From Octopus bimaculoides (lineage: Eukaryota), in the NCBI RefSeq assembly GCF_001194135.2, contig NC_069003.1, positions 370,061 to 434,060 on the forward strand: DNA of 64,000 nucleotides, given 5' to 3'. The notes beneath the pieces were generated by a model that was not told where the DNA came from, did no database searches, and worked only from the letters and a program-made list of their open reading frames with translations. This document shows positions 7,881 through 7,953 of this stretch, in pieces. Every line of letters starts with the position of its first letter. The first letter of the stretch is position 1. The position numbers and the translations under genes were made by a program.

Positions 7881-7953
7881 CTGGCCTGCAACAATAACAA
7901 CACAAATGCTTGATAAACTTACCTGGAAGAAAGAGAAAAAGGGAACACATTAA
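7881..7953 (-). other. Candidate recursive splice site (ratchet point) RS-C with 42-nt cryptic exon
   Basis: Minus strand ttttaatgtgttccctttttctctttcttccag|GTAAGTTT (junction 7923|7922); second donor CCAG|GTAAGG after 7881. Confidence 0.7.

What the first reader, a model, noticed from the sequence alone, without database searches (positions are those of the whole stretch)
7881..7953. Ratchet point RS-C with a frame-preserving 42-nt exon
Seen: ttaAt at -28, a 23-nt pyrimidine tract, CCAG|GTAAGTTT, and a strong second donor CCAG|GTAAGG 42 nt downstream. The 42-nt segment is open in two frames (VSLSSICVVIVAGQ; or KFIKHLCCYCCRP) and has a stop in the third. Inference: it could switch between zero-length recursive use and inclusion as a 14-codon microexon, a plausible regulated event, for example in neurons.
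Basis: partly seen in the sequence, partly recalled or inferred. Interest (0 to 1): 0.72.

Follow-up and report, generated by a model that had tools for sequence, protein, structure and literature searches.

The report
Probable recursive splice site, octopus intron
This is very probably one of three "ratchet points" that let an octopus gene remove a giant intron (over 64 kb) in steps, as flies and vertebrates do. The 42-nt segment next to it looks like the usual throw-away helper exon, not a proven coding microexon.

Summary

It is not an isolated chance site. The window holds exactly three matches to the published ratchet-point consensus, at 54265, 33668 and 7922. All three are on the minus strand, 20.6 and 25.7 kb apart. 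About 0.04 are expected per strand, or 0.06 for both strands in the tool's own shuffles.

All three share:
- TT at -6/-5;
- the core TT[GC]CAG|GTAAGTTT;
- long AG-free zones and branch-like motifs;
- unique, mutually unalignable flanks;
- a downstream donor at +49, +43 or +42, the "about 50 nt cryptic RS-exon" layout described in Drosophila.

No coding exon was detectable in 64 kb. Retroelement homologues are Octopus proteins.

So the ratchet-point reading is well supported by sequence. Usage and conservation could not be tested. The "regulated 14-codon microexon" part is not supported:
- in-frame length with two open frames has about 9 % prior probability;
- the sister segments (43 and 49 nt) are out of frame;
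- no protein in a 5.8-billion-cluster database shares even three 5-residue words with either translation.

This is a new lineage for a known mechanism.

The parts
7949..7953 (-). Branch-point-like TTAAT (YTNAY), A at -28 from the 3' splice site
   Evidence: the only YTNAY between -50 and -15
7925..7945 (-). Polypyrimidine tract: 21 uninterrupted pyrimidines, with TT at -6/-5 and TCTC motifs. It lies inside a 62-nt AG-free zone.
   Evidence: The median AG-free stretch in the window is 11 nt; only 5.5 % of AGs have 60 nt or more.
7915..7928 (-). Ratchet-point core TTCCAG|GTAAGTTT. The 3'ss AG is at 7924-7923; the regenerated 5'ss starts at 7922.
7881..7922 (-). 42-nt putative RS-exon. Most likely cryptic: used for exon definition, then removed through the regenerated donor.
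   Evidence: Peptide search negative. Frame properties at chance level.
7875..7883 (-). Downstream (RS-exon) donor CAG|GTAAGG, 12.1 bits
33661..33678 (-). Sister ratchet point, second in transcription order: TTCCTTGCAG|GTAAGTTT, junction 33669|33668
33617..33668 (-). 43-nt putative cryptic RS-exon (33668..33626) plus its donor CAG|GTAGGA (9.2 bits) at 33625
54258..54275 (-). Sister ratchet point, first in transcription order: TTATTTGCAG|GTAAGTTT, junction 54266|54265, 114-nt AG-free zone
54208..54265 (-). 49-nt putative cryptic RS-exon (54265..54217) plus its donor TAG|GTAAAT (6.3 bits) at 54216

Best explanation
The window is inside a very long intron (at least 64 kb) of an octopus gene transcribed from the minus strand. 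I infer the intron is removed stepwise by recursive splicing at three ratchet points: 54265, then 33668, then 7922.

Proposed steps at 7922:
1. The branch site, the 21-nt pyrimidine tract and CCAG are recognised as a 3' splice site. Exon definition across the 42-nt segment to the strong donor CAG|GTAAGG at 7880 helps this recognition.
2. The upstream exon, or the product of the previous recursive step, is ligated to G7922.
3. That ligation regenerates a consensus donor (exon-end|GTAAGTTT).
4. The regenerated donor normally outcompetes the donor 42 nt downstream. The 42-nt 'RS-exon' and the rest of the intron then leave together, with no trace in the mRNA.

Shown: the sequence anatomy, its non-random occurrence, strand coherence, spacing and independence from repeats.

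Inferred: that the region is transcribed on the minus strand, that the sites are used, and the order of events.
For: 1. Three matches to the a-priori consensus, all on the minus strand, against about 0.04 expected per strand. With relaxed thresholds there is no general minus-strand excess (10 minus, 20 plus), so the three form a distinct top class.
2. Segment lengths are 20,597 and 25,746 nt. Fly recursive segments average 17,953 nt, range 2.6-63.6 kb (10.1101/006163).
3. TT at -6/-5 in 3 of 3 sites, against 26 % of 140 acceptor-like sites here. This holds for 99.5 % of fly ratchet points (10.1101/006163).
4. GTAAGT is followed by TT at 3 of 3 sites, against 0 of the 27 other GTAAGT in the window.
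5. AG-free zones of 114, 41 and 62 nt, against a median of 11. YTNAY motifs at about -26 to -30.
6. A downstream donor at +49, +43 and +42. P(random position has a donor of 6 bits or more at +38..+52) = 0.037, so about 5e-5 for all three. This matches the 'short, about 50 nt' cryptic RS-exon with a flanking donor (PMC8605326) and the 5'ss enrichment after recursive sites (PMC6110457).
7. The flanks of the three sites do not align, and none lies in a repeat copy.
8. No credible exon or Pfam domain in 423 ORFs of 40 aa or more on either strand, apart from a retroelement PHD finger.
9. T>A skew of 0.051 on the minus strand, positive in 15 of 16 4-kb bins. This fits a minus-strand sense orientation if octopus shares the transcription-associated asymmetry known from vertebrates (my own knowledge).
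10. The region is not structured (z = +1.6), so the sites should be accessible.
Against: - No RNA evidence of any kind: no junction, lariat or sawtooth data were available.
- No cross-species conservation test was possible.
- The host gene, its exons and even transcription of this region are unverified.
- The 5'ss matrix I used is an approximate generic metazoan one written from memory, not an octopus model.
- The regenerated donor and the downstream donor are nearly tied (12.8 vs 12.1 bits), whereas fly ratchet donors are usually clearly the stronger (PMC8605326).
- Recursive splicing was not found reported for any mollusc in the searched library.
Confidence: 0.7

Rival explanations
1. Expressed recursive microexon, like Ubx mI/mII. 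The site is a ratchet point, but the 42-nt segment is a genuine alternatively included 14-codon exon. Inclusion would be decided by competition between the regenerated donor and the 7880 donor.
For: The length is a multiple of 3 and two frames are open. The downstream donor is the strongest of the three sites and nearly equals the regenerated donor (12.1 vs 12.8 bits). Fly precedents exist: the 51-nt Ubx m1/m2 exons, msi and heph (PMC8605326).
Against: The frame properties have about 9 % prior probability for one site, or about 25 % that at least one of three sites shows them. The sister segments are 43 and 49 nt. No database protein shares even three 5-residue words with either peptide. Caveat: clustering at 90 % identity could hide an isoform that differs by a 14-aa insert. 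Relative donor strength predicts inclusion poorly (hth, Ubx-m1, msi in PMC8605326). The host intron phase is unknown, and phase 2 gives an immediate TAA.
Confidence: 0.12
2. Chance juxtaposition of splice-site-like motifs in AT-rich, pyrimidine-tract-rich non-coding DNA, with no function.
For: The window has about 70 acceptor-like sites and about 30 GTRAGT per strand, so single coincidences do occur genome-wide. No RNA or conservation data support use.
Against: Three strand-coherent sites against 0.04-0.06 expected. Extra shared features were not part of the search pattern: TT at -6/-5, TT at +7/+8, AG-free zones and donors at +42 to +49.
Confidence: 0.08
3. Ordinary, non-recursive cassette, poison or pseudo-exons of an unannotated transcript (mRNA or lncRNA) that happen to begin with GTAAGT. 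The GTAAGT would never be used as a donor.
For: Each site is a well-formed short exon: strong 3'ss, 42-49 nt, then a donor.
Against: This does not explain why three independent short exons should all begin with the perfect donor GTAAGTTT (0 of 27 other GTAAGT carry TT). Two of the three would shift the reading frame. No peptide match.
Confidence: 0.07
4. The shared 17-nt core is part of an unrecognised dispersed repeat, so the 'enrichment' reflects copy number rather than selection.
For: The window is repeat-rich: a SINE-like family with at least 8 copies, LINE fragments and microsatellites. The three cores are nearly identical over 17 nt.
Against: Similarity stops at the core and the flanks are unalignable. 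BLAST of +-600 nt around each site finds no other copy overlapping a site.
Confidence: 0.03

Closest known systems
Drosophila intronic ratchet points with cryptic RS-exons (e.g. kuz, Bx, luna, the Ubx RP; Burnette 2005, Duff 2015, Joseph 2018/2021)
   Same: Consensus (Y)nNCAG|GTAAGT; TT at -6/-5; several sites per very long intron on the sense strand only; segments of about 20 kb; a short (about 50 nt) cryptic exon closed by a downstream donor (10.1101/006163, PMC8605326, PMC2773006).
   Different: A lophotrochozoan (octopus) host, not an insect. No RNA or conservation evidence yet. The downstream donor at this site is almost as strong as the ratchet donor. The 42-nt segment happens to be in frame, whereas fly cryptic RS-exons are 'generally out of frame'. 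The intron is full of SINE/LINE copies, unlike fly long introns (PMC2773006).
Ubx mI/mII and other expressed Drosophila RS-exons (msi, heph, ps)
   Same: A short, in-frame exon (51 nt in Ubx) that begins with a functional donor, inside a giant intron alongside a zero-length ratchet point. Inclusion is decided after ligation by donor choice (PMC8605326).
   Different: [quoted passage not shown] Here neither inclusion nor conservation is shown, and the peptide is absent from the protein database.
Vertebrate RS-exons in long neuronal genes (Sibley et al. 2015; Blazquez et al. 2018)
   Same: Exon definition of an RS-exon, a reconstituted 5'ss that competes with the RS-exon donor, location in long introns (summarised in PMC8605326 and PMC6224609).
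   Different: Only nine fully suppressed deep-intronic sites were noted definitively in mammals, usually one per intron (PMC8605326). Three Drosophila-grade consensus sites in one 64-kb stretch is the fly pattern.
Neuronal eMIC/SRRM4-dependent microexons
   Same: A short exon, a long AG-exclusion zone, and a long pyrimidine tract with UCUC motifs (PMC8797185).
   Different: [quoted passage not shown] Here the 3'ss and 5'ss are both very strong and there is no UGC in the last 40 nt before the AG at 7922 (sequence). Not a member on present evidence.

Membership tests
Intronic ratchet point / zero-length recursive splice site | Juxtaposed 3'ss and 5'ss around AG|GT matching (Y)nNCAG|GTAAGT | tested here: met
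   21 Y + CAG|GTAAGT at 7945-7917; 12.8 bits as a donor, the maximum class in the window
Intronic ratchet point / zero-length recursive splice site | TT at -5/-6 of the 3'ss (99.5 % of fly ratchet points) | tested here: met
   TTCCAG. Also met at both sister sites; background is 26 % (10.1101/006163).
Intronic ratchet point / zero-length recursive splice site | Lies deep in a long intron, on the sense strand, with sense-over-antisense excess of the motif | tested here: inconclusive
   3 on minus, 0 on plus. No exon detectable in 64 kb. T>A skew fits a minus-strand sense orientation. The host gene and its transcription were not identified.
Intronic ratchet point / zero-length recursive splice site | Downstream 5'ss that defines a short cryptic RS-exon (about 50 nt) | tested here: met
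   CAG|GTAAGG at +42; sister sites at +43 and +49 (PMC8605326)
Intronic ratchet point / zero-length recursive splice site | Regenerated donor stronger than the RS-exon donor | tested here: inconclusive
   12.8 vs 12.1 bits with an approximate matrix. The true -3..-1 of the regenerated site comes from the unknown upstream exon.
Intronic ratchet point / zero-length recursive splice site | Recursive junction reads, sawtooth read density, lariats from the ratchet donor | not testable with these tools
   No RNA-seq access
Intronic ratchet point / zero-length recursive splice site | Strong evolutionary conservation confined to the AG|GT core | not testable with these tools
   Attempts to reach orthologous DNA failed
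Expressed RS microexon (Ubx mI/mII type) | Exon begins with a functional donor and has a length that is a multiple of 3, open in the host phase | tested here: inconclusive
   42 nt, open in phases 0 and 1, TAA in phase 2. Host phase unknown. The property is at chance level.
Expressed RS microexon (Ubx mI/mII type) | Exon present in mRNA or protein isoforms | tested here: not met
   No protein cluster representative shares three 5-residue words with VSLSSICVVIVAGQ or KFIKHLCCYCCRP. Caveat: isoforms may be collapsed at 90 % identity, and no transcript data were searched.
Expressed RS microexon (Ubx mI/mII type) | Conservation across the whole exon, including wobble positions | not testable with these tools
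   No orthologous sequence available
eMIC/SRRM4-dependent neuronal microexon | UGC motif close to the 3'ss, with a weak 3'ss region | tested here: not met
   No TGC in the 40 nt before the AG at 7922, and the 3'ss is very strong (criteria from PMC8797185)

The most novel reading that the evidence does not exclude
Octopus, a lophotrochozoan with giant neuronal introns, uses Drosophila-style multi-step recursive splicing. At this third ratchet point the near-tie between the regenerated and downstream donors makes the 42-nt RS-exon a switchable in-frame 14-residue insert, an Ubx-mI/mII-like recursive microexon. This would be a second, independent example of protein diversity generated by recursive donor choice.
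Probability: 0.1. Interest if true: 0.65.

Novelty: new member of a known kind. Interest (0 to 1): 0.45.

Why it matters
Recursive splicing is documented experimentally in Drosophila (hundreds of ratchet points) and in vertebrates (a handful of deep-intronic sites plus many RS-exons). I found no report for molluscs or any lophotrochozoan in the searchable literature.

Coleoid cephalopod genomes are large, and genes with very long introns face the same problem of splicing accurately across tens of kilobases. A cluster of three fly-grade ratchet points in one octopus intron suggests three things:
- The fly-type solution, with several zero-length sites per intron, either predates the protostome split or evolved convergently.
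- It works in introns packed with SINEs and LINEs.
- The motif TTNCAG|GTAAGTTT could be used to predict recursive introns genome-wide in cephalopods.

The specific microexon idea would matter for isoform diversity only if inclusion were shown.

Tried and rejected
1. Repeat origin. A whole-window repeat scan was dominated by microsatellites. Targeted BLAST of the locus and of +-600 nt around each site, plus a 3-way alignment, showed no shared element. Rejected.
2. Hidden host exons. I checked ORFs of 90 aa or more, AG...GT-bounded open segments on both strands, and Pfam on 423 stop-to-stop ORFs of 40 aa or more. Only a retroelement PHD finger turned up. Exons under 40 aa or without Pfam domains could be missed.
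3. Orthologous DNA via spurious ORF calls. An 823-aa concatenate of all ORFs crossing the three sites gave no hit.
4. Locating the contig or its annotation. Two window ORFs and two UniRef Octopus homologues are not in the gene-position index. Two fetched loci (L001, an ENA metagenome contig, and L002, a Logan contig; 17.6 kb together) contain no motif but are far too small to serve as an empirical background.
5. An exact 26-mer scan of JGI metagenomes gave 0 matches.
6. Rfam and tRNA scans of the window found nothing.
7. RNA structure around the two donors is less stable than shuffled controls (z = +1.6), so no hairpin-switch model.
8. Poly(A)-signal strand bias as an orientation marker showed none (59 vs 52).
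It then ran with a 41-aa concatenate.
10. The 5'ss scoring uses a generic matrix written from memory, so absolute bit values are indicative only.

Full report
**Observation.** The motif is on the minus strand. Read 5'->3' on that strand:

TTTTAATGTG-TTCCCTTTTTCTCTTTCTTCC-AG(7923)|GTAAGTTTATCAAGCATTTGTGTTGTTATTGTTGCAGGCCAG(7881)|GTAAGGTCTT

- A script confirmed the TTAAT with its A at -28.
- The pyrimidine run is 21 uninterrupted Y (23 nt if the AG is counted).
- The segment 7922..7881 is 42 nt.
- The three translations are VSLSSICVVIVAGQ, a stop frame, and KFIKHLCCYCCRP.

So the description is accurate, apart from the strand and a slightly generous tract length.

**Is it more than chance?** CAGGTAAGT occurs three times on the minus strand (G of GT at 54265, 33668, 7922) and never on the plus strand. 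I used the consensus published before this analysis, (Y)nNCAG|GTAAGT (PMC2773006), implemented as at least 15 of 20 pyrimidines + YAG|GTRAGT.

- Exactly these three sites match on the minus strand and none on the plus strand.
- The expectation is 0.036 per strand: 72 acceptor-like sites times the order-2 Markov probability of GTRAGT after AG.
- 300 simulated sequences gave 0.047, and none had three matches. Poisson P(>=3) is about 8e-6.
- The search tool's own dinucleotide-preserving shuffles give 0.06 expected matches to TTNCAGGTAAGT on both strands, against 3 observed.
- No further sites appear within two mismatches of the 18-nt core.
- With relaxed thresholds there are 20 juxtaposed AG|GT sites on the plus strand and 10 on the minus. 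There is therefore no general bias, and the three sites are a separate top class.

**Features shared by the three sites that were not part of the search pattern.**

- TT at -6/-5 in 3 of 3, against 26 % of 140 acceptor-like sites. Duff et al. report this for 99.5 % of fly ratchet points, against 44 % of ordinary introns (10.1101/006163).
- GTAAGT is followed by TT in 3 of 3, against 0 of the 27 other GTAAGT in the window.
- AG-free zones of 114, 41 and 62 nt upstream of the acceptor, against a window median of 11. YTNAY branch-like motifs sit at about -26 to -30.
- Each site has a donor-like site shortly downstream: +49 TAG|GTAAAT (6.3 bits), +43 CAG|GTAGGA (9.2 bits), +42 CAG|GTAAGG (12.1 bits).
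- The chance that a random position has a donor of 6 bits or more at +38..+52 is 0.037, so about 5e-5 for all three.

An alignment of +-100 nt shows that only the core TT[GC]CAG|GTAAGTTT is shared; the flanks are unalignable. BLAST of +-600 nt around each site finds no other copy overlapping a site. These are independent occurrences in unique sequence, not members of a repeat family.

**Context.**

- The window is about 35 % GC with nine N gaps. It is full of (TA)n, (CA)n and (GA)n microsatellites, a SINE-like dispersed repeat and LINE fragments.
- The retroelement-like ORF at 14922-15347(+) has a PHD finger. Its named homologues are all Octopus bimaculoides RT/PHD proteins at 52-79 % identity.
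- I found no host-gene exon. ORFs of 90 aa or more were junk or transposon-derived. Splice-bounded open segments were unconvincing. Pfam scans of 228 minus-strand and 195 plus-strand ORFs of 40 aa or more gave only chance-level hits, apart from the PHD finger. Rfam and tRNA scans were empty.
- After masking microsatellites, the minus strand has T>A (0.051) in 15 of 16 4-kb bins. This is the direction expected for a sense strand, if octopus shares the transcription-associated asymmetry known from vertebrates (my own knowledge). It is weak evidence.

The simplest reading is that the whole window lies inside one minus-strand intron of at least 64 kb. It would be cut into segments of at least 9.7 kb, 20.6 kb, 25.7 kb and at least 7.9 kb. 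Fly recursive segments average 18 kb, range 2.6-63.6 kb (10.1101/006163).

**Mechanism.** In Drosophila and vertebrates a recursive site is first recognised as the 3' splice site of a short 'RS-exon' closed by a downstream donor. Ligation to the upstream exon then regenerates a donor at the junction. That donor usually outcompetes the RS-exon donor, so the RS-exon is discarded with the next intron segment. Mutating the ratchet donor converts skipping into constitutive inclusion (PMC8605326; exon-definition support in PMC6110457).

[quoted passage not shown] The segments of 42, 43 and 49 nt found here fit that description. I therefore read the second donor at 7880 as the exon-definition partner of the ratchet point, not as evidence for a coding microexon. 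The local RNA is not structured (z = +1.6), so no structural switch is indicated.

**The microexon proposal.**

- In-frame length together with two open frames has a prior of about 9 % for one site: 28 % of GTAAGT-initiated 42-mers from this strand are open in those frames, times 1/3. The probability that at least one of three sites shows it is about 25 %.
- The sister segments are out of frame.
- A search with both translations against 5.8 billion cluster representatives returned 'no candidate shares three 5-residue words'. That collection does contain Octopus proteins, and a protein containing either peptide would share 9-10 words.
- Caveats: clustering at 90 % identity could hide an isoform that differs by 14 residues, and transcript data were not searchable.
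- In favour of possible inclusion: this site's downstream donor is by far the strongest of the three and nearly ties with the regenerated donor, whose -3..-1 depends on the unknown upstream exon. The fly work also shows that donor strength alone predicts inclusion poorly (hth, Ubx-m1, msi; PMC8605326).
- The site does not look like an eMIC/SRRM4-type neuronal microexon. That class has weak 3'ss regions with UGC motifs near the AG (PMC8797185). Here the 3'ss is very strong and has no UGC.

**What could not be done.**

- No RNA-seq, and no cephalopod genomes for alignment.
- Attempts to reach orthologous DNA failed: ORFs spanning the sites, window ORFs and Octopus homologues in the gene-position index, and an exact 26-mer scan of JGI metagenomes.
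- Two loci retrieved through retroelement homologues (17.6 kb) hold no motif, but are too small to serve as an empirical background.
- The 5'ss scores come from an approximate generic matrix written from memory.

**Comparison and novelty.** The closest known system is the Drosophila intronic ratchet point with a cryptic RS-exon. Every sequence-level criterion I could test is met. The usage, conservation and host-intron criteria remain untested.

Vertebrate RS-exons work the same way, but deep-intronic, fully suppressed sites are rare there.

The searchable literature holds no report of recursive splicing in cephalopods or other molluscs. One paper contains both 'recursive splicing' and 'cephalopod', and in unrelated places. 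A broader query found no relevant paper among the 15 listed.

**Verdict.** This is a new member of a known kind in a new lineage, supported by strong in-window statistics but no functional data.

| Reading | Confidence |
|---|---|
| Site is a genuine recursive splice site with a cryptic RS-exon | about 0.7 |
| The 42 nt are also an expressed in-frame microexon | about 0.1 |

Noticed in passing
window 54258-54275 (-) and 33661-33678 (-): Two sister sites with the same core TT[GC]CAG|GTAAGTTT, strong pyrimidine tracts (18/20 and 16/20) and downstream donors at +49 and +43. Together with 7922 they are spaced 20.6 and 25.7 kb apart on the same strand.
   Followed up: yes
window 54260-54265 and 33663-33668 (-): Both sister sites read TTGCAG, a UGC directly abutting the acceptor AG. 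[quoted passage not shown] The site at 7922 reads TTCCAG instead. Significance unknown.
   Followed up: no
window 7915-7922, 33661-33668, 54258-54265 (-): The donor half is GTAAGTTT at all three sites, while none of the other 27 GTAAGT in the window is followed by TT. This may reflect an octopus-specific extended 5'ss or ratchet-point preference. Octopus splice-site statistics were not available to check.
   Followed up: partly
window ~51200-51750; copies at 5552-5832, 41266-41414, 42547-42605, 16423-16543, 25923-25985, 26457-26626, 24915-24983, 14479-14529, 53148-53217 and others: A SINE-like dispersed repeat with at least 8 partial copies in both orientations, 70-93 % identical. Its spurious ORFs share the motif '...LQLDALPNANHSE...'. 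No copy overlaps a ratchet site.
   Followed up: partly
window 14922-15347 (+); 29740-29869 (-): Retroelement debris. One ORF has a PHD finger (Pfam 6e-5), and its homologues are Octopus bimaculoides RT/PHD proteins at 52-79 % identity. A second ORF carries an RT-like motif (YLDSAKAFDKVNH) and abuts an N gap.
   Followed up: partly
whole window: Draft-assembly character: nine N gaps of 10-735 nt (2542 N in total) and very dense (TA)n, (CA)n, (GA)n and (CT)n microsatellites. A/T strand asymmetry (T>A on minus, 0.051) is positive in 15 of 16 4-kb bins. There is no G/C skew.
   Followed up: partly
L001 (ENA assembly ERZ25072730, contig ctg76587_3x_l, 21.5 kb): A contig in a 'metagenome' assembly, 35 % GC and labelled 3x in its name. 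It carries an RT ORF 41 % identical to the window's retroelement ORF. It looks like animal (possibly mollusc or cephalopod) host DNA inside a metagenome. It has no ratchet motif.
   Followed up: no
window 40937 (-): TGCTGCGAG|GTAGGTTCA: a weaker juxtaposed site on the same strand (Y 15/20, donor 10.0 bits). It has a GAG acceptor, which is disfavoured, so I did not count it as a ratchet point.
   Followed up: no
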